A program made the position numbers and the translations under genes. This document shows, piece after piece, positions 7,875 through 40,705 of a DNA stretch of 64,000 nt (its first letter is position 1; the number at the start of each line of letters is the position of its first letter). The stretch is taken from IMG/VR virus record IMGVR_UViG_3300020477_001008, positions 62,001-126,000 of that record. One strand, given 5' to 3'. The notes beneath the pieces were generated by a model, which ran no database searches, was not told the DNA's origin, and saw only the letters and a list, made by a program, of their open reading frames with translations.

Positions 7875-7877
7875 TTA

Positions 7878-13803: not shown

Positions 13804-13831
13804 AAAGGCGGCTTTCGGGTCGCCTTTTTTT
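13804..13831 (+). terminator. Rho-independent terminator
   Basis: AAAGGCGGCT-TTCG-GGTCGCC followed by a T-run. Confidence 0.8.
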
Positions 13832-13850
13832 GTGGCCATTAAATAGTAGT

Positions 13851-24696: not shown

Positions 24697-24773
24697 AGGC
24701 GATTAGCTCAGTTGGTTAGAGCATTCCGTTGATAACGGAAAGGTCGTAAGTTCGAGTCTTACATCGCCTACCA
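24697..24773 (+). tRNA. tRNA-Ile (anticodon GAT), CCA encoded
   Basis: Acceptor AGGCGAT/ATCGCCT, D-arm GCTC..GAGC, anticodon arm TTCCG-TTGATAA-CGGAA, T-arm GTAAG-TTCGAGT-CTTAC, 3' ACCA. Confidence 0.95.
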
Positions 24774-24811: not shown

Positions 24812-25624
24812 ATGTTAATTAGAAAAAAATATCAATTACCTACAATGTGGAAATTCAACAAGAAGTTTGACATTAAAAAACTTCAAGAAGAAGCTTTAAA
24901 ACTAGGTAACAGCTACGGTGACGTAATGGAAACTAACAAAGCATTATGTTCAAATAATCACGAATTAGTTATGAGTGTTTACAAACACTTTAAACAAATT
25001 AATTTAACTGAATTTGATCCTACTGCTCCTGCACCAACTGTTGAAAGTTGTGAAGCACTTGGTAAAACTGCTGGTACAGGTGATGAGTCAATTGGTAGAA
25101 TTGCAAAGTATAAATTGAAATCAAGACGTGGTGAATCTTTAGATCCAGCACTTAATGAACACAATTATAATACTCCAACAGAGCAATATAAAGGAACTTA
25201 CTTTCAAGAAGTTGTAAATTCATTTAATGCTGATGCTATTAGAGTTAGACTTGTTAGATTAGATCCAGGTAAAACACTTACACCACATATTGATTATGAT
25301 CCAACTTATGCAGTAAGAGTTATTGTTCCTATCTTTGCAGAGAAAGAAGCAACAAATTATTTTTGGCGTAAAGGTAAAGAAGAAGCATATCATTTAGAAC
25401 CAGATGGGTCAGCATACTTTTTAAATATTGGTTTCACTCATACTGTAGTTAATTCAGGTAGCACACCTAGAATTAGTTTAATGTTTAGTTTAAAAAATCA
25501 ATCAGACTTGCAAGAAATCCCAGATGCTGATTGGAATGAAAATAATAATATGGGTGAGCTACGTATTAATAATAATTATAAAACACAAAAGGCACTAGCA
25601 GATGCCCAACAATTGGCAGTTTAA
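24812..25624 (+). CDS. Aspartyl/asparaginyl beta-hydroxylase-like Fe(II)/2OG oxygenase
   Basis: RVRLVRLDPG...PHIDYD (HxD)...HTVVNSG.TPR. Confidence 0.75.
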   Translation: MLIRKKYQLPTMWKFNKKFDIKKLQEEALKLGNSYGDVMETNKALCSNNHELVMSVYKHFKQINLTEFDPTAPAPTVESCEALGKTAGTGDESIGRIAKYKLKSRRGESLDPALNEHNYNTPTEQYKGTYFQEVVNSFNADAIRVRLVRLDPGKTLTPHIDYDPTYAVRVIVPIFAEKEATNYFWRKGKEEAYHLEPDGSAYFLNIGFTHTVVNSGSTPRISLMFSLKNQSDLQEIPDADWNENNNMGELRINNNYKTQKALADAQQLAV

Positions 25625-25949
25625 AACTGAAATAAAAGAATCTGAAATACACGGCCACGGCAGGTTTGCTATGGAAGATATTCCTAAAGGGAAAACAGTT
25701 GTAACATTAGAAGGTCCTGCTTTACCAAAAGAACAAGCACCAAGAAAAATGCCAGTAAGTGATACACACAATATGAATTGCGAGGATACATTTGTTAATC
25801 ACAATGATGATGCCAACCTTACATTAGTAGATACTAAAATTACTATAACTGTTGAAAAAACATTTGTGTCTACAAAGAAGATTAAAAAAGGTGCTGAACT
25901 TACAATGAACTACGAAGAATTTGCAAGAGGCAAAAAGTTTTTATTCTAA
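25602..25949 (+). CDS. SET-domain protein (putative lysine methyltransferase)
   Basis: SEIHGHGRFA.EDIPKG, FVNH, IKKGAELTMNY SET motifs. Confidence 0.8.
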   Translation: MPNNWQFKTEIKESEIHGHGRFAMEDIPKGKTVVTLEGPALPKEQAPRKMPVSDTHNMNCEDTFVNHNDDANLTLVDTKITITVEKTFVSTKKIKKGAELTMNYEEFARGKKFLF

Positions 25950-26059
25950 TGAAAGATCCATTAAGCTATAAAATAAAAAAGTGGATAGAGTGGCTACTAA
26001 TTCAACAAGTTCCAGCAATACTAGTAATATTATTTCTAATTTACTGGCTTATATTTTAG
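25949..26059 (+). CDS. 36-aa membrane peptide (not in ORF track)
   Basis: ATG overlaps the SET stop (TAATG); MKDPLSYKIKKWIEWLLIQQVPAILVILFLIYWLIF*. Confidence 0.45.
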   Translation: MKDPLSYKIKKWIEWLLIQQVPAILVILFLIYWLIF

Positions 26060-26189
26060 TTTTACTTTCAATAAATTTTGCGTAATATTTCGTCAAAGGA
26101 TTATTTGGCTGATAACCAAATGGCTCTGACTGTGATTTTTTACGTTTTTTTGAAAGTTTTTTACGGGTTCTCTTTTTCTGACTCTGCAT
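26049..26189 (-). CDS. 46-aa very basic peptide (not in ORF track)
   Basis: MQSQKKRTRKKLSKKRKKSQSEPFGYQPNNPLTKYYAKFIESKTKI*; overlaps the end of the upstream oxygenase gene. Confidence 0.4.
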   Translation of the reverse strand: MQSQKKRTRKKLSKKRKKSQSEPFGYQPNNPLTKYYAKFIESKTKI

Positions 26190-26865
26190 CAAAATTATAT
26201 TTATCTTTCCAGCCCATATTTGCAAAAGGCCAGCCAGTAATTACAGCACGACATCCTGGTTTAGCATTTCTAACAGGGTTAACAAAGTGAGCAGATCCTA
26301 CTCTAAATAATACACAAGAGTTTCTTTTTGGTTTTATTGCTAAAGGTCCTGCAAGGTAAGGTTGTGTTTCTAGTTTTTCTTTAAACTGTTCCCAGTTTCC
26401 TCTTTCTTCTGGGTATGTATCAAAATGATCCATTAACATAATTTCATTAGGAAATACTAGTTCACCACCTTCTTCTGTAGTTAGATAATGTACAAAAACA
26501 AAGTCACCATAAATGTCTCTTCTTTCAGTATGTACGTTGTATATGCTTTGTGGGTTAAAAGTTTTTGTAGTAAATTGTAATACATTTTTAGGATTTATAT
26601 CTTGTATTAGTATTGGCTTATATACTTCTTCGAGAACTTCATTTAGTTTTGTAATGATTTGTACAACAAGTTTACTATTTTCGTGTATATTATATTTGAT
26701 ATGATTATAGTTGTAATAAGATTTACTTATTATATGTGGTTGTTCGTTACCATCTAATTCTTTTGTGTCTGAATTTTCTATATTTTTTAAAACGTCATCA
26801 ATTAATTCTTCTTCAACAAAATTTTCAGTATACCAGACTTCGTTTATGATTCTTTCTTCCCACAT
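26161..26865 (-). CDS. Fe(II)/2OG dioxygenase (prolyl-hydroxylase-like)
   Basis: HTE (HxE), YL..EEGGELVFP, KPKRNSCVLF...SAH.V..., R.VITGW. Confidence 0.75.
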   Translation of the reverse strand: MWEERIINEVWYTENFVEEELIDDVLKNIENSDTKELDGNEQPHIISKSYYNYNHIKYNIHENSKLVVQIITKLNEVLEEVYKPILIQDINPKNVLQFTTKTFNPQSIYNVHTERRDIYGDFVFVHYLTTEEGGELVFPNEIMLMDHFDTYPEERGNWEQFKEKLETQPYLAGPLAIKPKRNSCVLFRVGSAHFVNPVRNAKPGCRAVITGWPFANMGWKDKYNFDAESEKENP

Positions 26866-27462
26866 CTAAATATGTTCCTGTGTTCTTATATGAGCGAATG
26901 CTTCTACTAATACTTCAATGGCTTCATCTTCTGTATATCCTCTGCTTTGCAAATAAAACAAATGATCTTCATCTAATGCTCCTATTGTGCAACCGTGTGT
27001 ACAAATAACATCATCATTGTTAATATCTAATTCTGGTTTTGCAAAAGCATCTGATTCATTATCTAATAAAATGTTTTTGTTTAACATATGACTTTCGCAT
27101 TTTACTACATCTTTTGGTACAGTAATTTTTCCTTCAAAAGAACTTATACCTTTTTTATTAACAAATCTAAAATCTTGATTACATTTTGATTTACTGCCTT
27201 TATGTACAACATTAGTAATTAAATTAGTTTTCTTTTTTGTATTTTTAAAAAAACCATAAAGTTCACAAGAAGAATTTTCGCCTAGCTCAACATTAATTTT
27301 TGTATCGCTATCTGCTTTGCCTTTAGCTTCAAAAAATAAACAAGCTTTTGCGTTTGGTTTTATTTTAAAATTTAAATTATTGATATCAGTTATATTGATT
27401 TTTGTTTCTAATTCTTTATCAATAATATAATTATTTTCTATCATTATTAAACCCTTGCTCAT
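26866..27462 (-). CDS. sufD: Short SufD/SufB-family Fe-S assembly protein
   Basis: KPELDINNDDVICTHGCTIG.LDEDHLFYLQSRG..E.EA...LVEAF is the SufBD C-terminal signature. Confidence 0.8.
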   Translation of the reverse strand: MSKGLIMIENNYIIDKELETKINITDINNLNFKIKPNAKACLFFEAKGKADSDTKINVELGENSSCELYGFFKNTKKKTNLITNVVHKGSKSKCNQDFRFVNKKGISSFEGKITVPKDVVKCESHMLNKNILLDNESDAFAKPELDINNDDVICTHGCTIGALDEDHLFYLQSRGYTEDEAIEVLVEAFAHIRTQEHI

Positions 27463-28120
27463 CTATGGTATCAAGTAATGTTACATCACCAGTTCTGTTT
27501 ATTTTGCCATCTTGCAAAATATGTACATAAGTTGGGTTCAAGCTTCTTAATACAGATGAATTATGACTAATAACAATCCATCCAAACTTATCTTTGTTTT
27601 CAGTAATTAATTCTTTAACAATTTTTAATGCATCTACATCAAGTCCTGTATCGAGTTCATCAAGTATTACAAGTTTAGGATTAATATGTAACAGTTGTAA
27701 TATTTCGTTTTTCTTTTTCTCTCCACCTGATGCACCATCATTAAAATGTCTTTGAGCCCATCCGGATTGTAATTTTAATCTTTCAATGTCACTTAAATAT
27801 TTTTCATATTGTTTAGAAAATTGACTTACTAATTTATAATTTGTTATACCTGGTATACTAGGAGGAGATTGAAAGCTCATAAACAAACCAGAATTTGCTC
27901 TTTCAGTTACATCTAAATCAATTAATTCATTGTTGTTTAGTTTAATTGAACCAGTTGTTGCATATTGTTCTTTACCAACTATTGCATTTGCTAAACTTGA
28001 TTTGCCTGATCCATTAGGTCCTATTAAGGCGTGAAGTTCCCCTTGCTTAACATTTAAGTTAACGCCTTTAATGATTTCGTTATCATCTACTTTTACTTTT
28101 ATATCTTTTAATTCTAACAT
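27431..28120 (-). CDS. sufC: Fe-S assembly ABC ATPase SufC
   Basis: GELHALIGPNGSGKSSL, LFMSFQSP, SGGEKKKNEILQ, LDELDTGLDVDAL. Confidence 0.9.
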   Translation of the reverse strand: MLELKDIKVKVDDNEIIKGVNLNVKQGELHALIGPNGSGKSSLANAIVGKEQYATTGSIKLNNNELIDLDVTERANSGLFMSFQSPPSIPGITNYKLVSQFSKQYEKYLSDIERLKLQSGWAQRHFNDGASGGEKKKNEILQLLHINPKLVILDELDTGLDVDALKIVKELITENKDKFGWIVISHNSSVLRSLNPTYVHILQDGKINRTGDVTLLDTIDEQGFNNDRK

Positions 28121-28887
28121 TAATGACAATCTTCCGGCTTTGGTTCTTGATGTTTTTCAGCATCAAAGTAATAGTTAAAATTACAATGCTGATCTAACCC
28201 ATCTATAAGTTCTTTGGTAGCATAAGGCCAACCTGTTACTACTGGTCTTGCATTTTCTTTTACTTCTCCTTCAAGAGATGTAACGTAATGTGCTGATCCA
28301 ATAGCAAATATTACACATTTATTATATTTTGGTTTTATAGTAATATCGTTTAGATAACGCATTGGAAAACCTTTTGACTCAACTAGTTTTATATTTTCTT
28401 CCCAACGATTTTTTTGTTTTGGATATTTTTCTAAATGTTTTTCACAACCTTCTTTACTCGGAAATATTAAATGTCCACCTTTTTCATCTGAAAGGAAATG
28501 CATAAAAGCATAAGGTCCATATTTGTTAATTGGTTCTGTATGTAAATCATACCAACCTCTTTTGCTAAAGCTTTTTGTAAACAACTGTAACCCTTCTAAG
28601 TTTGTTTTAGGTACAGGTGTTTCTGTTAATGGCTGTAGCACTTCATTTATTCTATCCATATATAAATCAATTAATATTTTATTTTTATGTATATCTGTTC
28701 TATGTACAGTATAATTGTAAGTTGTAGCATTAACCCCAGAGTTTCTAAAGTTTGGTAGTATTGCTTCTCCTGGCTCTAGTTCAGTTGTTCCTGCTTGAAA
28801 CATTTCTCTTTTAATATGTTCAACAGTTTCTTCATTAAGAAAATCATCTATTTCCCAAATTTCGTTTTTAACTATTTCGTTCCACAT
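28120..28887 (-). CDS. Fe(II)/2OG dioxygenase, paralog of 26161-26865
   Basis: HTE, FLSDEKGGHLIFP, KPKYNKCVIF.IGSAH, RPVVTGWP. Confidence 0.75.
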   Translation of the reverse strand: MWNEIVKNEIWEIDDFLNEETVEHIKREMFQAGTTELEPGEAILPNFRNSGVNATTYNYTVHRTDIHKNKILIDLYMDRINEVLQPLTETPVPKTNLEGLQLFTKSFSKRGWYDLHTEPINKYGPYAFMHFLSDEKGGHLIFPSKEGCEKHLEKYPKQKNRWEENIKLVESKGFPMRYLNDITIKPKYNKCVIFAIGSAHYVTSLEGEVKENARPVVTGWPYATKELIDGLDQHCNFNYYFDAEKHQEPKPEDCH

Positions 28888-30683
28888 TATCTTTCGTGTC
28901 CTATTGCTATTACATTTGCATTTTTCATTCTTGCATCAGTACCATACATACTCATATCAAACTCTTTTTTCCATTCGTTAACGTCAGATTTAACAACATC
29001 TAAAGGATATATTGTGGACATCTCGTCAACTATACTTTCTTTATGATGCCAAATTTGATATATTTCATCAGAACGTAAACATCTACTAAAATAAAGATAT
29101 GTAGCCAAATCTTGTACTTCAGTTCTTTCTTCATCACAAAATATTTTTGTAATGATATCTCTATTTTTTCCAACCAACCATTTCATAAGTGGCATATTAT
29201 CTAAGTTATTATAAAACATTTTTATTTGATCTGCAACCGATGTACCACGTTCCACTAGGTATTTAATAGAATTTGATAGGGTTCTTGCATTATAAAAGTT
29301 ATGGTAAAACCACCAATAATCAAACATTTTCAATAATTCTGGTAAATCATATGATGAACATTGGTGCATAATTTCTATTTCTTCAAACTCATATGTACTT
29401 CTTTCATCTCTAAATTCTGGTTCGTTGTGTAATTTTTTATATCCAAGTCCACTAAAACTATAAGGAAATGCAAGTATTTTAGATTTAACTTTATATTCTT
29501 TTCTAAATTGTTTTGTGTATATTTCTGTATTTGGTACAAGATTTAAAAAATAAGAACGCATAAAATCAATACCAAGTTCATAATCTTTGTTTAAACTGTA
29601 TAACCAACTGTCTGCTGTTTCACCTGGTAATGCAATAATCATTTCACTTGTAACAGGCAATCCTTTTGATTTAAAACTGTCAATTAACGGCAATAACTTA
29701 TCATTATTAATGTTTGCTCTGTTAATAACTTTTAATGTTTGTTTGGCGTGTGTTTGAAAACTTACTTTTAGGTTACGTTGGTCTGCATCTAAATTGTTAT
29801 GTATAATATCTATAATTTCTGGCAACCACTTACTGCCATTCTTTGCAAGTCCTGAGTATGATATCTTAGGATTATTACCTGTTGCTTCTTTGTTTGCTTT
29901 CATCTTCTTTACAACATCTAAATCTCTAGGTAGCATACCAAAGTTAGCATCAAGTATTTCAAGCTCTGCTATGTTTGTGTGCTTGTATAAGAAGTCTAAT
30001 TGTGCATTAACAGGATCCATATCAAACTTTGTAACTTTAGATCTTGCTTGTCCACCCCAATCACAAAATGCACACTTAAAAGGACAACCACGATTAGTTT
30101 CAAAAGATGCTTTAACTCTTTTTTCTTTTGCAAGTATAGAATCAAATGTACCGTCTAAGTATGGTGTAGGCATTTCATAAGTTTCAATTTGATATAATTT
30201 ACGTCCTACTTCAACATTATTCCAACCAATACCAAATCCTCCATCGTGAGTTTGCATTGGTGCATCAATATTTTTTAAAAAATTGCTAACTAATTTTTCT
30301 CCTGGACCTACCCAAAATATATCTATGTAAGGATGTTCTTTTGCAAACTGTTCTGCAAGTTCTGGGTCTTCAGGTATATTAGGTCCACCATACATAGCAA
30401 TACCGTTTGGATTTACATCTTTGTAATGACTCATTAATTGATCGTTGTATGCTTGATTCCAAACATAACAAGTCAAACCAAATATATCAATGTTTTTAAA
30501 TTGTTCTGTGTATTCTTCTACAGGCTTAAATTTATATAATGGTTCGTTAAATGTGTAGTTTTCTTTTATTTGTGGAATTTTATTACAATAGCTTATGAGA
30601 CAAGCCGCGGCATATGGTAGCCACGTTTCGTGAATTACAGATATGGTTCCTAATTGTACTGTTTTCATAATGCTATTGTCCAA
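28887..30683 (-). CDS. B12-binding-domain radical SAM protein
   Basis: N-terminal GLTCYVWN...YGGP...GPGE cobalamin-binding-like fold; ETNRGCPFKCAFCDW; DANFG; LPGET. Confidence 0.85.
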   Translation of the reverse strand: MDNSIMKTVQLGTISVIHETWLPYAAACLISYCNKIPQIKENYTFNEPLYKFKPVEEYTEQFKNIDIFGLTCYVWNQAYNDQLMSHYKDVNPNGIAMYGGPNIPEDPELAEQFAKEHPYIDIFWVGPGEKLVSNFLKNIDAPMQTHDGGFGIGWNNVEVGRKLYQIETYEMPTPYLDGTFDSILAKEKRVKASFETNRGCPFKCAFCDWGGQARSKVTKFDMDPVNAQLDFLYKHTNIAELEILDANFGMLPRDLDVVKKMKANKEATGNNPKISYSGLAKNGSKWLPEIIDIIHNNLDADQRNLKVSFQTHAKQTLKVINRANINNDKLLPLIDSFKSKGLPVTSEMIIALPGETADSWLYSLNKDYELGIDFMRSYFLNLVPNTEIYTKQFRKEYKVKSKILAFPYSFSGLGYKKLHNEPEFRDERSTYEFEEIEIMHQCSSYDLPELLKMFDYWWFYHNFYNARTLSNSIKYLVERGTSVADQIKMFYNNLDNMPLMKWLVGKNRDIITKIFCDEERTEVQDLATYLYFSRCLRSDEIYQIWHHKESIVDEMSTIYPLDVVKSDVNEWKKEFDMSMYGTDARMKNANVIAIGHER

Positions 30684-30727
30684 ACCTAGATTGTTTTACA
30701 CGACAATTATAGTGTTATTTAGTTTGT

Positions 30728-31459: not shown

Positions 31460-31475
31460 TATATACGTATTTATT

Positions 31476-32609: not shown

Positions 32610-32619
32610 TTGTTAGTAT

Positions 32620-34579: not shown

Positions 34580-35009
34580 TGTTTCCTATCGTGTTTAATG
34601 TACCAACAATGGTATCAATCCACCCTTCAGCATTTTTTTCTTTAATAATAATATCTGCATCGTCACCATTAGCAACTATTGGTTTCTCAAACATTTCATT
34701 TGTATCTTCAAAGTCACTTGATTCAATAGTGTCTAACCATATTGTAAAATCAGCATTAAAAATTTTTCTTGTTTCAACTGTAGGACAAATAAAATCTGCA
34801 ACAACAATATGTCCTTCGTTTACTTTTCTATCAGCAAGTTGTTTCATACGTTCTGCTTGTTTTATTCTTCCTTCTTTACTATAATCAAAATTTTGATCAG
34901 TCTTTCTAACAACATCAGCATTAAGCCATTTTGCTTTTAATACTGGTACTAATTTTGAAGCTAAAGTAGTTTTGCCAGCACCTGACAAACCCATTATTAA
35001 TATTTTCAT
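34572..35009 (-). CDS. cysC: Adenylylsulfate (APS) kinase
   Basis: ILIMGLSGAGKTTLA, LNADVVR, DFICPT, FEKP. Confidence 0.82.
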   Translation of the reverse strand: MKILIMGLSGAGKTTLASKLVPVLKAKWLNADVVRKTDQNFDYSKEGRIKQAERMKQLADRKVNEGHIVVADFICPTVETRKIFNADFTIWLDTIESSDFEDTNEMFEKPIVANGDDADIIIKEKNAEGWIDTIVGTLNTIGNNA

Positions 35010-35770
35010 TTTTCTTTCTTTGATAATAACTTTATAAATTGATATCCTATATCAAGCTCCCACCATTTATATTTGAACGTTGCTTCTTGTGGTTTCCAAT
35101 GGTGATTATTATGCCAGCCTTCTCCCCACATTAATATTCCTAGTATAGGAATGTTTGTTGAGTTATCATCTGTATCGTGATTTCTATAACCAAACGTATG
35201 AGTTAATGTGTTAATAAATGATCCAGCATTCCATAATATCATTGCTGGAAATAGATAAGCGGCAACTAATAACATTGGGTCAATAAGATACCATATTATT
35301 GCTATTACTAAATGAATAGCAAAATACCAATTATGCAATATTAAATGAAACTTTGATCTAATTAATCTTATAACATATCTTGGGTTAGGTGTTTCAAACA
35401 TACTCAGCCATTGCACTCTAAAAAATCCTAAATGTTCAGGAGAGTGCGGATCACCTTCTTTATCAGTATGGTGATGATGTTCTTTATGTATTGCTACCCA
35501 ACCTATACTTGATCCTGTTAAACCATAAAAGCCACATAATGTTCCAAAGTATTCAAACCATTTAGGTGCCTTCCAGCTGTTATGACTTAACAATCTATGA
35601 TATGTCATAGTCATACCAAAACATCCAGTAACAAAATAAACTGCAAATCCAATTAACCAATGATGTAATGATCCATACATAATCATTGGAATAATTGATA
35701 AGTGAGTTATAATTTGTACTAAAAGAAGCAAGTATTGATCTCTAGTATATTTTTTCATTATTATTCCCAA
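35006..35770 (-). CDS. Membrane acyl-CoA/lipid desaturase (delta-9 type)
   Basis: Three His boxes HRLLSH, HKEHH, HNNHH; DPHSP; GEGWHNNHH; TM helices. Confidence 0.9.
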   Translation of the reverse strand: MGIIMKKYTRDQYLLLLVQIITHLSIIPMIMYGSLHHWLIGFAVYFVTGCFGMTMTYHRLLSHNSWKAPKWFEYFGTLCGFYGLTGSSIGWVAIHKEHHHHTDKEGDPHSPEHLGFFRVQWLSMFETPNPRYVIRLIRSKFHLILHNWYFAIHLVIAIIWYLIDPMLLVAAYLFPAMILWNAGSFINTLTHTFGYRNHDTDDNSTNIPILGILMWGEGWHNNHHWKPQEATFKYKWWELDIGYQFIKLLSKKEK

Positions 35771-35850
35771 TATTTTAGTCTATTATAATGATATTTATTG
35801 TATTTTACAACCGCAGATGTTACAATAAATATAAGAAAAGGAACAAAAAT

Positions 35851-36252
35851 ATGTATTGTATAGTATGGAGACATTATAATTTAAACGGTATAACGCCTTA
35901 TGTGGTTAGTAAGTATCCTAATGAGTGGGATTACTATCACCAACCAGAATTAAAGGATAAAAAACGTGGATATAAATTAAGACCAGATAATGCACATAAA
36001 ACAATGGGCGGAAAAGACGTAGAAGAGCTTGGAAAATTTTATAGAGAACAAGTTGCTAATGGAAACGTTGTTGCTAATAAAGTTATTGATATTGATTACA
36101 ATACTATTGAAGATACTTTAGTTTTTAAAAGTAAAGAAGCCTGTGATATATATTTGAAAAAATTGTCAGAAGTAGATTGGACAAAATCTGATCATACAAT
36201 TGTAATAGAAAAAGAGATTAAAAATTTAAAAGAGTTACCAGCATTTCAATAA
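35851..36252 (+). CDS. Hypothetical protein (probable start MYCIVW)
   Basis: AAAGGA SD before ATG 35851; TAAATA upstream; coupled to the next gene. Confidence 0.65.
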   Translation: MYCIVWRHYNLNGITPYVVSKYPNEWDYYHQPELKDKKRGYKLRPDNAHKTMGGKDVEELGKFYREQVANGNVVANKVIDIDYNTIEDTLVFKSKEACDIYLKKLSEVDWTKSDHTIVIEKEIKNLKELPAFQ

Positions 36253-37307
36253 TGAAATATAAGTTTTATGTAAAAGATTGTCCAGATGAGACTGTACCTC
36301 ATTGGTGGATAAAAGAAGAAACTAATTTGCAGTATTATATGGATAATATGAAACCAGTTAATACTGATAAAAAGTTTTTGTCTTTTACACACCCAAATAT
36401 TGACCTTTCTAAAGTACAACAATCTTGTAAATCTGCTTTTGAAAAATTTGGCTTCTTTGGTTTTTTAAACATATATGGTAAAGAAATGTTTAGAGATCCA
36501 ACGTACGGTGGATTAAGTTTAGTATATAATCCAAATTACAAATATAAAGATCAAGTAGAAAAAAATGCACAGACTTTAGGCTATCCTCGTAATAATATGG
36601 ATTTGAATTTCATATTAGAAAATTTAGATATTTGGAAAAAAACAATGGTAGCTGGTTTAGATAAAGACATTTGGAGAAAAACTACAGAAACAGGAACTCA
36701 TAGTGCTTTTAAATTTCTTTTTAGAAATAATGTAATTGATGAAGAAACATACAATAACCTTTGTAAAAAATATCCTGACCAAAAACAATTAAAGAAAAAA
36801 ATTCTTAAGAATACATATCAAGATAGTTGGGGATTTAACACACCCACTGATGTAATGAATCACGAATACCTTGCAGAGCTTACAAAACTTTTTAAAAGAA
36901 GTTTTATAAGAAGTAGATTAGCAAAACTACAACAACTAGATAATGACGAAGTAAGAAAAAATGTAAATGAATATATGTGGCACAGAGACGATTCTATTTT
37001 TATGGAAGCTAGAATTAATTTAAGTGTTACCTCACCAGAAGATGCATTTGGAATGGAAATTGAAGGAGATGGTCGTTATTATCTTCAACCTGGTAAATGG
37101 TATTCTTGGGATACTGGAATTACACATAGGCCTTTTGCTGACAAAACAAATTTAACTAGAACAAATTTAGTTTATGCAGTTAGTCCTTGGTTTGATTATA
37201 TTAAAGAAGAACAAGCTTGGGTATCAAATGAATTTTTTGGAGAGAAACATCCTGTTGATATGTTTATTGATGGAGATGTAGTTGAAGGTTTAAAATTTAT
37301 AGATTAA
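36252..37307 (+). CDS. AspH-like/cupin Fe(II)/2OG oxygenase
   Basis: RSRLA...WHRDD (HxD)...RIN...WDTGITHR...RTNLV. Confidence 0.6.
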   Translation: MKYKFYVKDCPDETVPHWWIKEETNLQYYMDNMKPVNTDKKFLSFTHPNIDLSKVQQSCKSAFEKFGFFGFLNIYGKEMFRDPTYGGLSLVYNPNYKYKDQVEKNAQTLGYPRNNMDLNFILENLDIWKKTMVAGLDKDIWRKTTETGTHSAFKFLFRNNVIDEETYNNLCKKYPDQKQLKKKILKNTYQDSWGFNTPTDVMNHEYLAELTKLFKRSFIRSRLAKLQQLDNDEVRKNVNEYMWHRDDSIFMEARINLSVTSPEDAFGMEIEGDGRYYLQPGKWYSWDTGITHRPFADKTNLTRTNLVYAVSPWFDYIKEEQAWVSNEFFGEKHPVDMFIDGDVVEGLKFID

Positions 37308-37953
37308 TTATTTTAATTGGTTCTTTTAAAACTGTTCCGTATTCAAATGTCTCATCGTGATGTTCAGTTGATTGCAACGTTTCATTAGCTTCGCCAATAC
37401 CTAACATTAATTCAACTCTTTTATCAATGCCTAACGTGTGCATCATTTTTTCGTGGTTAGAAAAACATTTGCAAAATCCAGTTTTGTATCCAATGCTACC
37501 TGCCATTATATTTGCGTATGCACTACTGATACCAACGTGCATAGAAACTAATTGTTCTGATAAAAAATGATAATCGTTTTGAACTTTTCGCATTAATGAA
37601 TGTTCTTCCTGATAAAACTCATCAGTTTTTCCTCTTGCTTCGTTGTTTGATCCTAAAGCTTTTTGAAATCTATTAACCCAAACTAAAACTAAAGGTGCAA
37701 GTATTTGAGAATTTTTGTGTTCTTTGCCACCAGCAATGGTATAACCTAATGTACAATCATATAATTCTCTTTTAATTGTATTGTCTGTAACACATATTAG
37801 ATCAAAATAGTTAATTCCGTTCTTTGTTGGTATGCTAATTGCAAAGTCAACTATTCTTTTAGTGTGGGGCTGAGGAAACGGTACACTGACATCCCAGTTT
37901 CTTTGAGTGTGTGAGGTAAGTTTGACTACTTTTTTTAATTGTTGCTCTAACAT
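37297..37953 (-). CDS. Nitroreductase-family flavoprotein
   Basis: SHTQRNWD, PTKNG, NSQILAP, GYKTGFCKCF, LMLGIG. Confidence 0.65.
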   Translation of the reverse strand: MLEQQLKKVVKLTSHTQRNWDVSVPFPQPHTKRIVDFAISIPTKNGINYFDLICVTDNTIKRELYDCTLGYTIAGGKEHKNSQILAPLVLVWVNRFQKALGSNNEARGKTDEFYQEEHSLMRKVQNDYHFLSEQLVSMHVGISSAYANIMAGSIGYKTGFCKCFSNHEKMMHTLGIDKRVELMLGIGEANETLQSTEHHDETFEYGTVLKEPIKIINL

Positions 37954-37974
37954 TAAAAGCTATTTATTATGATG

Positions 37975-38706
37975 TTAAGATTTGGCCCACTCTCTTTCCA
38001 AACACCACCAACATTTACCGCAACTTTGTTCAAGAATTGATTGATCACCTTCACAACTACGAGTAGTATTCCACAGGCCTACTATCTTGTAGTGCTTGTA
38101 TGAGCCCCATATCCATTTTTTATCCACAGATATCATTGGTGTATAATAATAAGTGTCATTAGCAAACCATTTGTTTGCATCATTGTCAGTATCTTGTAGT
38201 TTTTCCATAACAGGAGCGTCTTTATTTCTTTGATAAGTTATTATTTCACTCATAGAAAAAGGTAAACCTTCAGAATTAGTTGTTTGTCCTTCTTTCCAGT
38301 ATGGTGTAAGTTGATCTTCAGGTGGCCAACTAGTTCTACCTGATATAAACAAAGTAGGTTTATGAAGTAATGCTATTGCTTTCATATGTTTATACATCGA
38401 TGAAGTAATTGTTGCTTTTTGTCGAAATGTACACCAACTATAATCGTGATCAAATTTTGTATAATCAAAAATCCAATTTATTACTTTTAATGCGTGATAG
38501 AAGTTAAAATAATTTTTTGTTCTTCCAGAACTAGTATAGATTATAACTTTAAATTTATTATTTGTTTGTTTTTGATGTTGTAATATTTTCCATAACAATA
38601 ATGCACTATCGGCCCCGCCACTGCAACTAACACATATAGTTTTATGTTCTTCAGATATCTGAAGTTCAATACTTTTATCATTATGCGTACTTTTTATAGC
38701 AACCAT
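37975..38706 (-). CDS. QueC-like PP-loop ATPase
   Basis: SCSGGADSALL PP-loop; TRSCEG...CGKCWWCLER zinc site; probable start MVAIK 5 nt after TAAATA. Confidence 0.75.
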   Translation of the reverse strand: MVAIKSTHNDKSIELQISEEHKTICVSCSGGADSALLLWKILQHQKQTNNKFKVIIYTSSGRTKNYFNFYHALKVINWIFDYTKFDHDYSWCTFRQKATITSSMYKHMKAIALLHKPTLFISGRTSWPPEDQLTPYWKEGQTTNSEGLPFSMSEIITYQRNKDAPVMEKLQDTDNDANKWFANDTYYYTPMISVDKKWIWGSYKHYKIVGLWNTTRSCEGDQSILEQSCGKCWWCLEREWAKS

Positions 38707-38795
38707 ACAGCTATTTAACAAATTTGTAACAAATTTTAATAGTAATTCTTATACTAATAGGTTGAAATTTATTGGAAAGTATTATAATATAAATT

Positions 38796-38954
38796 ATGAA
38801 AAGAATAGTAAATGAAGTAGAAACGCCAGATGGAAAGTGGAGAGTTGTAGTCCGTGAAGATGGAACAATGGATTGTGTTAACCTACATCATATCCAAGGT
38901 AAGTATACTATGGAAGAGATATTAGAAGCTTTTAATAAATTAGAACAGGAATAA
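38796..38954 (+). CDS. 52-aa hypothetical protein (not in ORF track)
   Basis: MKRIVNEVETPDGKWRVVVREDG...; TTGAAA-N17-TAATAT promoter ends 5 nt upstream. Confidence 0.6.
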   Translation: MKRIVNEVETPDGKWRVVVREDGTMDCVNLHHIQGKYTMEEILEAFNKLEQE

Positions 38955-38957
38955 TAT

Positions 38958-39143
38958 ATGGGAAAGTTCCAAGGCATTAATAGAAATTATTCATCAACAG
39001 ATGAATACGGTGGAAAGTCACCTGAGCAAAGAGCAAAAGAATTAAAAAAGAAAATGGACGAGTTTTTAGCTAAAGGTGGCAAAGTAGAAAAATGTAAACC
39101 AATGAAGCCTACTAAAGAACAATTAAAAAGTTGGAAAATTTAA
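38958..39143 (+). CDS. Small protein with SutA-like RNAP-binding motif
   Basis: ELKKKMDEFLAKGGKVEK resembles the SutA core (MEEFLxxGGKV). Confidence 0.5.
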   Translation: MGKFQGINRNYSSTDEYGGKSPEQRAKELKKKMDEFLAKGGKVEKCKPMKPTKEQLKSWKI

Positions 39144-39398
39144 ATGGAAGACTTTACTAAAAGATTAGAAGAAATAAAATCTGAAAAAGCAAAATTAGAT
39201 CCTTTGCGTCCTCAGTTTTGCAAAACAAAAACTGATTGGGCAAAATTAGAAAAATGGTGGGAACTATCAAAAGAACAAAATCGAATTGAGAGTCAAATGT
39301 GGGAAATAGAAAAACATATAGAAGAAAATACTCTATCAACACCACTATCAGAATATGAAGCGATTGAAAAACAAACAAAAGACAACGATAAAGTTTAG
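39144..39398 (+). CDS. Hypothetical coiled-coil protein
   Basis: Abuts neighbouring genes in a tightly packed operon. Confidence 0.6.
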   Translation: MEDFTKRLEEIKSEKAKLDPLRPQFCKTKTDWAKLEKWWELSKEQNRIESQMWEIEKHIEENTLSTPLSEYEAIEKQTKDNDKV

Positions 39399-39573
39399 AG
39401 AAAAACTAATAATGACATTGGTTATTGTTATGTCATTTGCAGTAGTAGTTTTATCTTATTCAATTATCGATATGCAACAATCTATTTCTGAACTTTATGA
39501 AATACAATTAGAAAATAATGCAATGATGAATTTTTTTAAAATGTTATTAGGAGGTATAGGACCTAGTGTCTAA
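39355..39573 (+). CDS. Small membrane-anchored coiled-coil protein
   Basis: One TM segment followed by a coiled coil. Confidence 0.55.
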   Translation: MKRLKNKQKTTIKFREKLIMTLVIVMSFAVVVLSYSIIDMQQSISELYEIQLENNAMMNFFKMLLGGIGPSV

Positions 39574-39976
39574 GAAAATAGGCATCACGTTTTCAACTTT
39601 TGATTTGCTACACGCAGGTCATATTGCTATGCTTGAAGAAGCAAAATCAAAATGTGATTATTTGATAGTTGGTTTACAAAGTGATCCTACAATTGATAGG
39701 CCTGATACAAAGAATAAACCTATACAAACTATTTTTGAAAGGTACTTACAATTAAAAGCATTAAAATATGTTGATGAAATTATTCCTTATCAAACTGAAC
39801 AAGACTGTGAAGACATATTATCAACATTACCAATTAATATACGTATTATAGGTGAAGAATATAAAACCAAACCATTTACTGGTGCAGATATTTGTAAAAG
39901 AAGAAACATTGAAGTTTATTTTAATAAACGTGAACACAGATTTAGTTCAACAGATTTAAGAGAGAGAATAAAATAA
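39566..39976 (+). CDS. Glycerol-3-phosphate cytidylyltransferase-like (TagD family)
   Basis: FDLLHAGH (HxGH), YVDEII, RFSSTDLR. Confidence 0.85.
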   Translation: MSKKIGITFSTFDLLHAGHIAMLEEAKSKCDYLIVGLQSDPTIDRPDTKNKPIQTIFERYLQLKALKYVDEIIPYQTEQDCEDILSTLPINIRIIGEEYKTKPFTGADICKRRNIEVYFNKREHRFSSTDLRERIK

Positions 39977-40705
39977 ATGGGATATTACGACGATAAACAT
40001 AGCAGTCAAGAAGAAGTTGAAAAAGAACTACTTAAACATTGGCAACCAGAATGGCTTAAAGAAAAAAACATTTATGATTGGCTAAATGATGAAACAACAA
40101 TTCCTTATTTAGAATTAGATGTTTATGACAATATGCCTTGGCCTGAAATTTTTAAAGAAGCCCAAGCTGTTAAAGATCAATGCGTAATACATAGAGAATA
40201 TTCAGGAGGAGGAACTTGGTTAAGTGGTTGCTTACACGGGTTAGGTACAGAATATACTAATACTTGGGATAGTTATGAAGAGTTTAAGCATTTAACAGAA
40301 GAGCAAGTTGAGTATAAATGGACAACGTTATCTGAACAATGTCCGGTTACAACAAACTATTTTAAAAATATATTTCCTTTTAGAGAATATAAACGATTAA
40401 GGTTTATGTGGGTAGAACCGGGCGGTTATATTTTGCCACATAGAGATAATGACCATAGAACATTTTCTCCGGTTAATGTTTCAATTTATAATCCTCAAGG
40501 TTGTGAATTTAGATACAAAAATTGGGGTACTGTTCCATTTACAAATGGTAGTGCTTTTTTAATTGATGTAGGACAAGAACACGCAGTATGGAACAAATCA
40601 AATGAGGCAAGACTACATATCATTTGCCACGGTAGAAGAAAAAATCCAGAATGGAAGCAGTTGTTATTAAAAAGTTGGCAGAAATATGGCTATGGTAAAT
40701 ATTAG
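39977..40705 (+). CDS. Aspartyl/asparaginyl beta-hydroxylase-like oxygenase
   Basis: RLRFMWVEPGGYILPHRD (HxD)...EHAVWN.SNEARLHII. Confidence 0.78.
   Translation: MGYYDDKHSSQEEVEKELLKHWQPEWLKEKNIYDWLNDETTIPYLELDVYDNMPWPEIFKEAQAVKDQCVIHREYSGGGTWLSGCLHGLGTEYTNTWDSYEEFKHLTEEQVEYKWTTLSEQCPVTTNYFKNIFPFREYKRLRFMWVEPGGYILPHRDNDHRTFSPVNVSIYNPQGCEFRYKNWGTVPFTNGSAFLIDVGQEHAVWNKSNEARLHIICHGRRKNPEWKQLLLKSWQKYGYGKY

What the first reader, a model, noticed from the sequence alone, without database searches (positions are those of the whole stretch)
24812..40705. Phage-encoded tailoring-enzyme island with its own cofactor supply: candidate undescribed modification pathway
Seen: within ~16 kb are two radical SAMs (one B12-type, one SPASM-type; a third lies at 13851), five Fe(II)/2OG or AspH-type oxygenases, a SET domain, a possible methyltransferase, GNAT, sulfotransferase, APS kinase, desaturase, nitroreductase, QueC-like ATPase, a cytidylyltransferase and SufC/SufD. 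Many genes are translationally coupled. Established: these families hydroxylate, methylate, acylate, sulfate or cross-link substrates, and CysC and Suf supply PAPS and Fe-S. Inference: this resembles a self-contained biosynthetic or post-translational modification system rather than scattered auxiliary metabolic genes. No PKS/NRPS or obvious RiPP precursor is present, so the substrate may be a phage protein, host protein, lipid or small molecule.
Basis: partly seen in the sequence, partly recalled or inferred. Interest (0 to 1): 0.8.

Follow-up and report, generated by a model that had tools for sequence, protein, structure and literature searches.

The report
Late-expressed tailoring-enzyme island, marine jumbo phage
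An uncultivated marine T4-like jumbo phage carries a real, tightly packed block of oxygenases, radical-SAM enzymes and methyl-, acetyl- and sulfo-transferases headed by late-promoter motifs; parts of it recur in hundreds of ocean phages, including a cultured SAR11 phage, but its substrate is unknown and it is a mosaic, not one self-contained pathway.

Summary
Window 24.8-40.7 kb encodes 2 radical SAMs (one B12/KedN5-like, one SPASM), 5 Fe/2OG-cupin oxygenases, SET, GNAT, a sulfotransferase-like protein, an APS-kinase-like P-loop protein, a delta-9-type desaturase, a nitroreductase-fold protein, a PP-loop/QueC-like ATPase, a cytidylyltransferase, SufC and a short SufD. Only the 'possible methyltransferase' found no support.

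The host genome is a 242.6-kb fragment, about 55% complete, of a marine T4-like jumbo phage.

The island is a mosaic. A conserved network (AspH-like/SET, two P4H-like 2OG enzymes, B12 rSAM, GNAT, desaturase) recurs in shuffled order in many marine phage contigs and in cultured Pelagibacter phage Mosig. There it sits upstream of tail-fibre genes on the same strand. The SufCD, SPASM, sulfotransferase and other cassettes are lineage-specific inserts.

Main transcription units carry T4-type late-promoter motifs. Partner genes (PLP enzyme, SDR, second desaturase) lie about 80 kb away in this genome.

The Fe-S supply is genome-wide (SufB/C/D, NfuA, SufT-like, ferredoxin, FNR) alongside 24 radical SAM genes, so the island is not self-contained.

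Best guess (about 0.35): late decoration of phage proteins, probably host-recognition proteins. Envelope-lipid remodelling is a close rival. No RiPP hallmarks were found.

The parts
24697..24773 (+). tRNA-Ile(GAT), immediately upstream of the island
   Evidence: ARAGORN; Rfam tRNA 73 bits
24778..24784 (+). ATAAATA, a T4-type late-promoter-like motif heading the AspH1-SET unit
   Evidence: The motif occurs 44 times in the contig against 264 +/- 15 in shuffles. 31 copies lie within 60 nt upstream of a gene, including the portal gene and many structural genes. It is conserved upstream of orthologues in L002-L004, L007 and L008.
24812..25624 (+). AspH1: AspH/cupin-type Fe(II)/2OG oxygenase, the hub of the conserved network
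   Evidence: PF05118 E 1.1e-5. H159/D161/H210/R220 are invariant in 36 homologues. AF2 pLDDT 86. Best folds: nucleoside-antibiotic hydroxylase 7v4m at 1e-11, free L-Pro hydroxylases at 1e-8, OlsC and AspH at about 6e-6.
25602..25949 (+). Minimal SET-domain methyltransferase (115 aa), overlapping AspH1 by 23 nt
   Evidence: PF00856 E 4.8e-9. NH.. and ..NY motifs are present in the sequence. The orthologue is fused to the GNAT orthologue in L032:2036-3040.
26161..26865 (-). 2OG oxygenase a (P4H-like), last gene of the 12-gene minus-strand operon
   Evidence: PF13640 E 1.7e-7. Paralogue of 28120-28887 at E 2.7e-40. H/E/H/R are invariant in alignment A3.
26866..27462 (-). Short SufD-like protein (C-terminal SufBD core only); variable insert
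   Evidence: PF01458 E 2.1e-36, profile positions 63-232. Found only in L002 and L004 among the relatives. Paralogue of the full-length SufB elsewhere in the contig.
27431..28129 (-). SufC ABC-type ATPase; variable insert
   Evidence: PF00005 E 1.9e-23. Found only in L002 and L004.
28120..28887 (-). 2OG oxygenase b, prolyl-hydroxylase-like fold, overlapping the B12 rSAM stop
   Evidence: AF2 pLDDT 92. Best folds: PKHD-type hydroxylases, OGFOD1 (rmsd 3.9 A over 224 columns), Tpa1, PHD2.
28887..30683 (-). Class-B (B12-type) radical SAM enzyme, KedN5-like
   Evidence: PF04055. NF033712 E 5e-45 over residues 64-391, below the cut-off. C200/C204/C207 are invariant. More than 3000 metagenomic homologues, some carrying PF02310.
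30728..31507 (-). Unknown 259-aa protein; part of the variable SPASM cassette
   Evidence: No Pfam or PHROG hit. Homologue only in L002.
31476..32609 (-). Radical SAM/SPASM enzyme; variable cassette
   Evidence: PF04055 + PF13186. Member of the 23-member rSAM paralogue family of this contig.
32620..33318 (-). Unknown 232-aa protein; variable cassette
   Evidence: No family hit. Homologue only in L002.
33312..33950 (-). GNAT acyl/acetyltransferase, conserved core
   Evidence: PF00583 E 3.4e-5. Present in 8 relatives. 40% identical to the Mosig 'N-acetyltransferase', which overlaps the AspH1 homologue there. Fused to SET in L032.
33926..34579 (-). Sulfotransferase-like protein; variable
   Evidence: No Pfam hit. 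PRSGTS motif. Atlas neighbours at 0.95-0.97 carry PF13469, PF09037 or PF00685.
34572..35009 (-). APS-kinase-like P-loop kinase (145 aa); variable
   Evidence: PF01583 E 3.1e-10, but only profile positions 5-91 of 152. Not found in L002.
35006..35770 (-). Membrane delta-9-type fatty-acid desaturase, first gene of the minus-strand operon
   Evidence: PF00487 E 3.8e-16. Three His boxes are visible. A desaturase is present in 68 of 73 distant AspH1-anchored loci.
35792..35798 (-). ATAAATA late-promoter-like motif, 28 nt upstream of the desaturase start
   Evidence: Conserved upstream of the orthologous desaturase in L002-L004, L006-L008 and L032.
35788..36252 (+). Unknown 154-aa protein
   Evidence: No family hit. 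Homologue only in L002.
36252..37307 (+). Divergent AspH-like oxygenase (the fifth oxygenase)
   Evidence: Atlas neighbours carry PF05118. AspH1 HMM E 1.4e-4. HxD...H is visible in the sequence.
37297..37953 (-). Nitroreductase-fold protein, with an ATAAATA motif 14 nt upstream
   Evidence: Atlas score 0.94, structural TM 0.80 to viral nitroreductase clusters. Motif.
37975..38721 (-). PP-loop ATPase with a QueC-like C-terminus
   Evidence: PF06508 E 6.6e-5, PF01171. phrog_1550 E 6.5e-10. No TGT/DpdA on the contig.
38796..39573 (+). Four small ORFs (52-84 aa) of unknown function; not conserved beyond the nearest relative
39566..39976 (+). Cytidylyl/adenylyltransferase (RfaE domain II / TagD-like)
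   Evidence: PF01467 E 1.4e-16. TIGR02199 E 6.3e-24, below the cut-off.
39977..40705 (+). AspH2: second AspH-type oxygenase
   Evidence: PF05118 E 2.2e-12.
13830..15056 (+). Twitch-type radical SAM outside the island, one of 23 paralogues
   Evidence: NF033640 at 233 bits, above the cut-off of 170..

Best explanation
The region is a late-transcribed block of active-looking tailoring enzymes in an uncultivated marine T4-like jumbo phage. It is a mosaic rather than one linear pathway.

Conserved network:
- AspH-like oxygenase coupled to a SET methyltransferase.
- Two prolyl-hydroxylase-like 2OG oxygenases coupled to a B12-type radical SAM enzyme.
- A GNAT and a delta-9-type desaturase.

Lineage-specific cassettes:
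- SufC/short SufD.
- SPASM rSAM plus two unknown proteins.
- Sulfotransferase plus an APS-kinase-like protein.
- A divergent AspH.
- Nitroreductase plus a PP-loop ATPase.
- Cytidylyltransferase plus AspH2.

Most likely mechanism (inferred): the enzymes covalently decorate proteins made late in infection, most plausibly virion host-recognition proteins such as tail fibres or baseplate parts. The steps would be hydroxylation by the Fe/2OG enzymes, O-sulfation of new hydroxyls where the sulfotransferase cassette is present, lysine or N-terminal methylation and acetylation by SET and GNAT, and C-methylation or other radical chemistry by the rSAM enzymes. Fe-S clusters and electrons would come from phage-encoded SufB/C/D, NfuA, a SufT-like protein, ferredoxin and FNR spread over the genome.

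Shown: gene content, intact catalytic motifs, operon packing, the conserved late-promoter motif, recurrent clustering in distant phages, the GNAT-SET fusion, and position on the same strand upstream of tail-fibre genes in a cultured SAR11 phage.

Inferred: late expression, protein as the substrate class, and virion proteins as the target.
For: - Families typical of protein modification. SET was found, and by established knowledge SET enzymes are known only as protein methyltransferases. The two 2OG paralogues fold like OGFOD1, Tpa1, PHD2 and P4H.
- In L032 the GNAT and SET orthologues are one 334-aa fusion protein. Here SET overlaps AspH1 by 23 nt.
- The ATAAATA motif is 6-fold depleted, 44 copies against 264 +/- 15 in shuffles. 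It sits 12-35 nt upstream of the portal, sheath-like, PAAR and other structural genes. It also sits upstream of AspH1, the desaturase (head of the 12-gene operon) and the nitroreductase. It is conserved upstream of the orthologues in relatives and upstream of the Mosig operon and its tail-fibre genes.
- In Pelagibacter phage Mosig the AspH-desaturase-aminotransferase...GNAT-AspH1 operon runs straight into the annotated tail-fibre genes on the same strand. Homology to this island is shown.
- Iyer et al. 2010 (PMC2938197) found bacterial neighbourhoods of beta-hydroxylase, sulfotransferase, PAPS synthetase and acetyltransferase next to phage tail-collar and collagen-like proteins.
- Bacterial AspH-sulfotransferase fusion clusters exist.
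- Short fragments identical to the island occur in marine metatranscriptome assemblies. This is weak support, because DNA carry-over is possible.
Against: - In 73 distant loci the commonest partners of AspH1 are a membrane desaturase (68), a HisC/CobD-like PLP enzyme (64) and an SDR (about 30). These families normally act on lipids or small molecules.
- The AspH1 model is closer to free-amino-acid and nucleoside hydroxylases and OlsC than to AspH.
- No substrate protein was identified. No collagen-like repeats were found.
- Homologues of Mosig's tail-fibre proteins were found in only 1-3 of the 97 anchored phage loci, though fibres diverge fast.
- Late expression rests on a motif, not on timed RNA data.
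Confidence: 0.35

Rival explanations
1. Envelope lipid, aminolipid or LPS remodelling. The desaturases, the AspH/OlsC/LpxO-like hydroxylases, the GNAT acting as an N-acyltransferase, the PLP enzyme, the SDR, the sulfotransferase and the RfaE-like nucleotidyltransferase would alter host membrane lipids or surface glycolipids. The purpose could be receptor masking, superinfection exclusion or phosphorus sparing.
For: - Desaturase and PLP enzyme accompany AspH1 in 68 and 64 of 73 distant loci, at median gaps of 0.2-0.9 kb.
- They form overlapping desaturase-PLP-AspH1 cassettes in L011, L013 and L030.
- OlsC is among the best Swiss-Prot fold matches of AspH1, E 6e-6.
- The sulfotransferase's neighbours include NodH- and Stf0-like clusters.
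- The cytidylyltransferase resembles RfaE domain II and TagD.
- Pelagimyophage host-recognition clusters hold LPS-type genes (PMC7029224).
Against: - SET enzymes have no known lipid substrates (established knowledge), yet SET is coupled to AspH1 and fused to the GNAT.
- The 2OG paralogues resemble protein prolyl hydroxylases.
- The GNAT hits PF00583, with no hit to an OlsB-type family.
- No GT1 or GT2 glycosyltransferase was found on the fragment.
- A late promoter fits poorly with phosphorus sparing.
Confidence: 0.25
2. Functionally unlinked auxiliary genes that accumulate in a hyperplastic region of T4-like genomes. Clustering would reflect where insertions are tolerated, not a shared substrate.
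For: - Gene order is shuffled between relatives, and several cassettes are present or absent.
- The PLP, SDR and second desaturase genes sit about 80 kb from the island here.
- B12 rSAM, GNAT, 2OG and SET accompany AspH1 in only 7-38% of distant loci.
- Hypervariable AMG islands are well known in cyano- and pelagimyophages (PMC7029224).
Against: - 88-93% co-occurrence of AspH1 with the PLP enzyme and desaturase at about 42% identity, with sub-kb spacing.
- The GNAT-SET fusion.
- Overlapping start and stop codons across 12 genes.
- Shared late-promoter motifs conserved in relatives.
Confidence: 0.15
3. Biosynthesis of a RiPP or other small-molecule natural product, in the style of proteusins or modified amino acids or nucleosides.
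For: - The B12 rSAM is most similar to KedN5-type small-molecule C-methyltransferases.
- SPASM and twitch rSAMs are expanded.
- The AspH1 fold is closest to a nucleoside-antibiotic hydroxylase and to free-proline hydroxylases.
- Partners elsewhere include PLP, SDR, TauD-like and methylase enzymes.
- An SbmA/BacA-type transporter and an M17 aminopeptidase are encoded on the contig.
Against: - No PqqD/RRE or Nif11-type leader was found.
- No Cys-rich or repeated small precursor lies next to the enzymes.
- The small ORFs at 38796-39573 are not conserved beyond the nearest relative.
- No PKS/NRPS domain appeared among the ORFs scanned.
Confidence: 0.1
4. Nucleic-acid (DNA or tRNA) hypermodification.
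For: The set of a PP-loop/QueC-like ATPase, rSAMs, a GNAT, a P-loop kinase and (elsewhere) a PLP enzyme resembles the enzyme sets of thymidine or 7-deazaguanine hypermodification (my own knowledge of those pathways). A thymidylate synthase and a DHFR lie near the module in L013.
Against: - No TGT/DpdA was found on the fragment. QueD and QueE were not searched for.
- The late-promoter motif does not fit replication-coupled modification.
- The core enzymes (SET, P4H-like, AspH-like, desaturase) are not nucleic-acid enzymes.
Confidence: 0.05

Closest known systems
Enzyme operon in the host-recognition cluster of Pelagibacter phage Mosig EXVC030M (MT647606) and other pelagimyophages (PMC7029224)
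   Same: Homologous AspH1 (39%), GNAT (40%), desaturase (28-30%) and PLP enzyme (30%). Nitroreductase and 'MoaA-like' radical SAM genes are also annotated nearby. TATAAATA motifs head the operon.
   Different: Mosig is a 141-kb Kyanoviridae phage. Its operon abuts tail-fibre genes and holds TauD-like, class-I methylase, FMN-reductase and peroxiredoxin genes. No homologues of the SET, B12 rSAM, P4H-like pair, SufCD or sulfotransferase were seen in the 24.6-kb Mosig stretch compared. Here the island lies between gp46 and the baseplate/portal module.
Tandem dioxygenase arrays of cyanophage Syn9, and bacterial beta-hydroxylase/sulfotransferase/PAPS-synthetase/acetyltransferase neighbourhoods (Iyer et al. 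2010, PMC2938197)
   Same: Multiple unrelated Fe/2OG and cupin oxygenases in one phage locus. The same combination of AspH-type hydroxylase, sulfotransferase, PAPS-related kinase and acetyltransferase. A predicted peptide or tail-collar protein substrate.
   Different: This island adds B12 and SPASM radical SAMs, SET, a desaturase and SufCD. No halogenase, JmjC/MINA member or collagen-like or tail-collar gene was found next to it. Neither system has been tested experimentally.
T4-like marine environmental viral genomes with many radical SAM genes plus Fe-S assembly AMGs (Nishimura et al. 2017, PMC5332604)
   Same: A T4-like marine phage combining a dozen or more rSAM genes with its own Fe-S assembly, glutaredoxin, PaaD/SufT-like and ClpP genes.
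   Different: Those genomes carry A-type carrier or IscU scaffolds. This one carries SufB, SufC and SufD-like proteins plus NfuA, ferredoxin and FNR, and at least 24 rSAM genes on half a genome.
Proteusin-type RiPP pathways (polytheonamide; recalled from my own knowledge, not tested)
   Same: A combination of B12 rSAM C-methyltransferases, other rSAMs and a 2OG hydroxylase acting on one substrate.
   Different: No precursor with an NHLP or Nif11 leader, no RRE, no dehydratase or protease cassette.
Ornithine-lipid / lipid A tailoring (OlsC, LpxO; recalled from my own knowledge)
   Same: An AspH-family hydroxylase working beside acyl-chain enzymes. OlsC is a fold neighbour of AspH1.
   Different: No OlsB/OlsA or Lpx genes. 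SET and P4H-like enzymes have no counterpart in those pathways.

Membership tests
Radical SAM superfamily | CX3CX2C cluster motif in a PF04055 core | tested here: met
   PF04055 for 28887-30683, 31476-32609 and 13830-15056. C200/C204/C207 are invariant. All 23 twitch/SPASM paralogues carry the motif.
Class B (cobalamin-dependent) radical SAM methyltransferase, KedN5 family | N-terminal B12-binding domain plus rSAM core, scoring above the NF033712 cut-off | tested here: inconclusive
   NF033712 E 5e-45 but 154 bits against a cut-off of 700. PF02310 was not detected in this protein but is precomputed for several 45-48% homologues. Cofactor and methyl transfer were not tested.
SPASM-domain radical SAM maturase | C-terminal SPASM auxiliary-cluster domain | tested here: met
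   PF13186 E 2.2e-7 at residues 271-352. No equivalog family reached its cut-off.
Aspartyl/asparaginyl beta-hydroxylase family (PF05118) | Cupin/DSBH fold with an HxD...H iron triad and a 2OG-binding Arg | tested here: met
   Pfam above the cut-off for 24794-25624 and 39977-40705. H159, D161, H210 and R220 are invariant. The AF2 model matches AspH-family structures.
Aspartyl/asparaginyl beta-hydroxylase family (PF05118) | Protein (EGF-like Asp/Asn) substrate | not testable with these tools
   The best fold matches are small-molecule hydroxylases (7v4m, proline hydroxylases) and OlsC, ahead of AspH. Family membership does not fix the substrate class.
Prolyl-hydroxylase-like 2OG oxygenases (PF13640) | DSBH fold with an HxD/E...H triad and Arg | tested here: met
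   PF13640 E 1.7e-7. H116/E118/H200/R214 are invariant. The model (pLDDT 92) matches PKHD, OGFOD1, Tpa1 and PHD2.
SET-domain protein methyltransferase | SET fold with the NH(S/x)C-type and ELxxxY-type motifs | tested here: met
   PF00856 at 37 bits against a cut-off of 22.4, covering profile positions 1-104 of 105. Motifs are visible in the sequence. The L032 orthologue has canonical NHSCxPN and post-SET Cys motifs.
Adenylylsulfate (APS) kinase CysC | Full-length match including the APS-binding C-terminal half, and an ATP sulfurylase to supply APS | tested here: not met
   Only profile positions 5-91 of 152 are matched. No PF01747-type ATP sulfurylase was found on the 242.6-kb fragment. CysD/N-type sulfurylase was not tested. 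It should be filed as an APS-kinase-like P-loop kinase.
Sulfotransferase | PAPS-binding 5'-PSB loop and a sulfotransferase fold | tested here: inconclusive
   No Pfam hit even at E 5. A PRSGTS loop is present. Language-model neighbours at 0.95-0.97 partly carry PF13469, PF09037 or PF00685.
SUF Fe-S assembly system | SufB + SufC + SufD scaffold complex (plus SufS/SufE sulfur donor) | tested here: inconclusive
   SufC and a 198-aa SufD C-terminal core lie in the island. Full-length SufB is at L205:857-2281. No cysteine desulfurase was looked for, and about 45% of the genome is missing.
Membrane fatty-acid desaturase (delta-9 / SCD-DesC type) | Three His boxes in a PF00487 membrane domain | tested here: met
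   PF00487 at 60 bits. HxxxxH, HxxHH and HxxHH boxes are visible. Regiospecificity was not tested.
7-deazaguanine (QueC) pathway | QueC together with FolE/QueD/QueE and a TGT/DpdA transglycosylase | tested here: not met
   Only the C-terminal 50-55 residues match QueC, and the whole-protein score is barely over the cut-off. No PF01702 was found on the contig.
RiPP biosynthetic gene cluster | Precursor peptide gene and a recognition element (RRE/PqqD) or leader family | tested here: not met
   No PF05402 or PF07862 on the contig. No conserved small ORF lies beside the enzymes.
T4-type late transcription unit | TATAAATA-like motif just upstream, gp55 sigma factor present, late timing | tested here: inconclusive
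   The motif statistics and positions are met. A candidate gp55-like gene at 21009-21878 was judged by eye only, with no Pfam hit. No time-resolved expression data are available.

The most novel reading that the evidence does not exclude
A widespread, phage-encoded multi-enzyme system would chemically hyper-decorate virion host-recognition proteins late in infection, by hydroxylation, C- and N-methylation, acetylation and sulfation. It would be powered by the phage's own SufBCD/NfuA/ferredoxin/FNR supply for two dozen radical SAM enzymes. This would be a new layer of host-range determination in abundant ocean phages, including SAR11 phages. An equally novel variant is that the same kit builds or tailors an aminolipid or envelope molecule.
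Probability: 0.2. Interest if true: 0.85.

Novelty: new variant of a known kind. Interest (0 to 1): 0.6.

Why it matters
Arrays of oxygenases and radical SAM enzymes in marine T4-like phages have been noted for 15 years without a function.

This case shows several things:
- Part of the array is a conserved, clustered gene network found in hundreds of ocean phage contigs.
- The network is probably a late function.
- GNAT and SET are linked by a fusion.
- A cultivated virus-host pair (Pelagibacter phage Mosig / HTCC1062) carries the core next to its tail fibres. That makes the question directly testable by virion proteomics and lipidomics.

The phage also carries an unusually complete Fe-S and electron supply for at least 24 radical SAM genes. 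That bears on how far large phages free themselves from host cofactor metabolism.

Tried and rejected
- Megablast of the island against 50,697 phage records found no match.
- tblastn of the B12 rSAM against the same records found no match.
- PDB sequence-profile searches for the 2OG family and the GNAT gave nothing useful.
- Collagen-like G-X-Y repeats as a candidate substrate: none on the contig.
- Rfam on the whole window found only the tRNA, with no riboswitch.
- RiPP hallmarks (PqqD/RRE, Nif11 leader), glycosyltransferases GT1 and GT2, TGT/DpdA and ATP sulfurylase were all absent from the 242.6-kb fragment.
- The apparent 1-kb gap in the downstream rSAM array is another rSAM ORF, not a precursor gene.
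- The sigma-70 promoter scan was no better than shuffles, and terminator-like sites were fewer than in shuffles.
It was re-run without that sequence.
- Literature searches for a characterised function of phage AspH-like, desaturase or PLP cassettes, or of phage SufBCD, found none in the open-access library.
- Metatranscriptome contigs gave only short identical fragments. They do not prove transcription and do not define transcript ends.
- Tail-fibre adjacency could not be generalised. Homologues of Mosig's tail-fibre proteins appear in only 1-3 of 97 anchored loci.

Full report
**Context.**
- The window is bases 62,001-126,000 of a 242,646-bp linear IMG/VR virus record with 32% G+C. CheckV estimates it at 55% complete, so the genome is roughly 440 kb.
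- It is a T4-like myovirus. A Mre11/Rad50-like gp47/gp46 pair lies at 21,910-24,692, preceded by a gp55-like ORF judged by eye only. The window also holds a gp5-like spike, a baseplate protein, the gp20 portal, the gp21 protease and the gp23 capsid protein.
- The capsid protein is 69.6% identical to those of PA5oct-like Pseudomonas jumbo phages.
- Exactly matching proteins occur in Tara Oceans and other marine assemblies.

**Observation check.**
- There are five oxygenases. Two are clear AspH-type proteins (24812-25624 and 39977-40705). One is a divergent AspH-like protein (36252-37307). Two are paralogous PF13640 enzymes (26161-26865 and 28120-28887).
- The 598-aa radical SAM is a class-B enzyme, most similar to the KedN5 family (E 5e-45, below the family cut-off).
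- The 377-aa radical SAM has a SPASM domain. The one at 13830-15056 is a twitch-type NF033640 member.
- 'SufD' is only the C-terminal 198-aa core.
- The 'APS kinase' matches only the N-terminal 60% of the profile.
- The sulfotransferase and nitroreductase calls rest on language-model and structural neighbours, not on HMMs.
- No methyltransferase other than SET was found.
- The twelve minus-strand genes from 35770 to 26161 have gaps of -32 to +44 nt, so the translational coupling is real.

**Regulation.**
- The heptamer ATAAATA occurs 44 times on the contig, against 264 +/- 15 in shuffles. 31 copies lie within 60 nt upstream of a gene on the same strand. Those genes include the portal, a sheath-like gene, a PAAR gene and the giant-protein operon. 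This is the behaviour expected of T4-type late promoters.
- Copies sit upstream of AspH1, just after the tRNA-Ile. Copies also sit upstream of the desaturase that heads the 12-gene operon, and upstream of the nitroreductase.
- The motif is conserved upstream of the orthologous AspH1 and desaturase genes in relatives.
- In Pelagibacter phage Mosig it precedes both the homologous enzyme operon and the tail-fibre genes.
- Late expression is therefore inferred, not shown. Marine metatranscriptome assemblies hold only short identical fragments.

**Comparative genomics.**
- Eight IMG/VR relatives keep the order AspH1-SET-2OG-(SufDC)-2OG-B12 rSAM-(...)-GNAT-(...)-desaturase. Their B12 rSAMs are 47-84% identical to this one.
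- The SufDC, SPASM, sulfotransferase, AspH3, nitroreductase/PP-loop and cytidylyltransferase/AspH2 cassettes occur only in the nearest one or two relatives.
- Full-length B12 rSAM homologues at 32-46% identity lie on large contigs of up to 398 kb. Some of these are binned as Bdellovibrionales MAGs but share many genes with this phage. They again sit among AspH1-like, P4H-like, SET, GNAT and desaturase genes.
- Half-length homologues at 26-33% identity in Streptomyces, Sericytochromatia and other bacteria do not have these neighbours.
- Anchoring on AspH1 instead gave 73 distant loci at 41-50% identity. 68 hold a desaturase, 64 a HisC/CobD-like PLP enzyme, about 30 an SDR and 28 the GNAT. 23 hold the B12 rSAM, 15 both the B12 rSAM and a 2OG enzyme, and 5 hold SET.
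- Median gaps in those loci are 0.2-1.2 kb for the first three pairs.
- In this genome the PLP enzyme, the SDR and a second desaturase lie at contig 3.9-8.0 kb, about 80 kb from the island. In the 328-kb relative they are inside it.
- The system is therefore a network of co-occurring genes with fluid arrangement, not a fixed operon.

**Links between members.**
- In L032 the GNAT and SET orthologues form one 334-aa fusion protein.
- In Mosig the GNAT overlaps the AspH1 homologue. Here SET overlaps AspH1.
- Bacterial clusters of AspH-sulfotransferase fusion proteins exist. That gives a hydroxylate-then-sulfate logic for the variable sulfotransferase cassette.

**Structures.**
- AspH1 (pLDDT 86) is closest to a nucleoside-antibiotic hydroxylase (7v4m, E 1e-11) and to free L-proline hydroxylases. 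OlsC and AspH follow at about 6e-6.
- The 2OG enzyme next to the B12 rSAM (pLDDT 92) is closest to PKHD-type hydroxylases, OGFOD1, Tpa1 and PHD2. These are mostly protein prolyl hydroxylases.
- TM-scores are about 0.5, so these results indicate clades, not substrates.

**Cultured counterpart.**
- The only cultured phage with an AspH1 homologue is Pelagibacter phage Mosig EXVC030M.
- Its operon reads AspH-desaturase-aminotransferase-FMN reductase-peroxiredoxin-hypothetical-TauD-like-methylase-GNAT-AspH1. It runs on the same strand straight into the annotated tail-fibre genes.
- A nitroreductase, three 'MoaA-like' rSAMs, an ArnB-like aminotransferase and a carbamoyltransferase lie on the other strand.
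- This region is the 'host recognition cluster' described for pelagimyophages (PMC7029224).

**Cofactor supply.**
- The contig encodes 23 twitch/SPASM radical SAMs with intact CX3CX2C motifs, plus the B12 enzyme.
- It also encodes full-length SufB, NfuA, a FeS_assembly_P (SufT/PaaD-like) protein, a 2x[4Fe-4S] ferredoxin, a ferredoxin-NADP reductase-like protein and glutaredoxin. Three ClpP paralogues, ClpS and an SbmA/BacA transporter are present too.
- Nishimura et al. 2017 described the same theme, 12 rSAMs plus Fe-S AMGs, in a 183-kb T4-like environmental genome.

**Interpretation.**
- I favour late covalent decoration of phage proteins, most plausibly host-recognition proteins, at confidence 0.35. 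The reasons are that SET is a protein-only family by established knowledge, the GNAT-SET fusion, the P4H-like folds, the late-promoter motif, the Mosig arrangement and the neighbourhoods of Iyer et al. 2010.
- The main rival is envelope lipid or aminolipid remodelling, at 0.25. It is driven by the very tight AspH1-PLP-desaturase association and by the OlsC-like and small-molecule-like fold of AspH1.
- Unlinked AMGs in a hyperplastic region come at 0.15, RiPP or small-molecule synthesis at 0.10, and nucleic-acid modification at 0.05.
- RiPP hallmarks, GT1/GT2 glycosyltransferases, TGT and ATP sulfurylase were not found on the fragment. About 45% of the genome is unseen.

**Novelty.**
- The kind of locus has been noticed before: oxygenase and rSAM arrays with Fe-S helpers in marine T4-like phages (PMC2938197, PMC5332604, PMC7029224). 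It has never been characterised.
- This is a new variant, with B12 and SPASM rSAMs, SET, SufB/C/D and a jumbo genome.
- The analysis adds the conserved network, the fusion, the late-promoter evidence and a cultivable test system.

Noticed in passing
L022:12815-20000 and L023:1-14054 (contig 198,815-220,054), plus scattered copies: 24 radical SAM genes lie on this half-genome. 23 are twitch/SPASM paralogues, all with CX3CX2C, and about 14 of them form one tandem array. The apparent gap at contig 210.7-211.8 kb is another rSAM ORF that my gene caller missed.
   Followed up: partly
L205:857-2281; L022:8786-10674; L021:8646-9005; L023:9743-10510; L015:5851-6249: Genome-wide Fe-S and electron supply: full-length SufB, an SbmA/BacA transporter (E 9.5e-136), NfuA-like, FeS_assembly_P (SufT/PaaD-like), a 2x[4Fe-4S] ferredoxin, a ferredoxin-NADP reductase-like protein and glutaredoxin.
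   Followed up: partly
L015:3919-4698, 5312-5854, 7051-7968 (all minus strand): A second desaturase, a 180-aa minimal SDR and a 305-aa HisC/CobD-like PLP enzyme. These are the commonest neighbours of AspH1 in other phages but are displaced about 80 kb from the island here.
   Followed up: yes
L032:2036-3040 (+): A single 334-aa ORF fuses orthologues of the island's GNAT and SET proteins. The SET half has canonical NHSCxPN and post-SET motifs.
   Followed up: yes
window 1-7874 (-), continuing to contig 57,689: A giant 4061-aa ORF, followed in the same operon by a 1158-aa ORF. A scan of its 3291 N-terminal residues gave no Pfam hit. It is headed by a late-promoter motif upstream of 11354-11779 and may be a VrlC-like structural protein.
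   Followed up: partly
whole contig; e.g. window 47318, 24778, 35798: ATAAATA is 6-fold depleted (44 copies against 264 +/- 15). Most copies lie 12-35 nt upstream of start codons, which marks T4-type late promoters.
   Followed up: yes
window 11908-12468 (+); L022:10706-11293; contig 155,809-156,417: Three ClpP paralogues plus a ClpS-like gene (contig 194,484-194,786). The same pairing of Clp with Fe-S AMGs was noted by Nishimura et al. 2017.
   Followed up: no
L017:3901-5439 (-): An M17 leucyl aminopeptidase (E 3.8e-117) sits among rSAM genes and two tandem families of unknown proteins (contig 33-42 kb), upstream of tail-fibre-like genes carrying Peptidase_G2 and E1_FCCH domains.
   Followed up: no
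L203:1-2144: One assembly carrying the identical rSAM array has a glutathione peroxidase, a Na+/H+ antiporter, a Zn-ribbon protein and NDUS4-like genes where another has MotA/ExbB and ClpS genes. This is either variable gene content or a chimeric assembly.
   Followed up: no
window 40921-41467: A 547-nt stretch with no ORF of 50 aa or more and no Rfam match. Its RNA fold z-score is only -1.6. It remains unexplained.
   Followed up: partly
L025-L034 (GTDB genome contigs up to 398 kb): Contigs labelled as Bdellovibrionales or Pseudobdellovibrionaceae MAGs carry many homologues of this phage's genes. They may be jumbo-phage contigs binned with bacteria.
   Followed up: no
window 31000-36999: Two 2019 marine metatranscriptome runs hold short (about 100-400 nt) contigs. 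Several are identical to the GNAT, the kinase-like gene, the desaturase/ORF junction and the SPASM gene. DNA carry-over cannot be excluded.
   Followed up: partly
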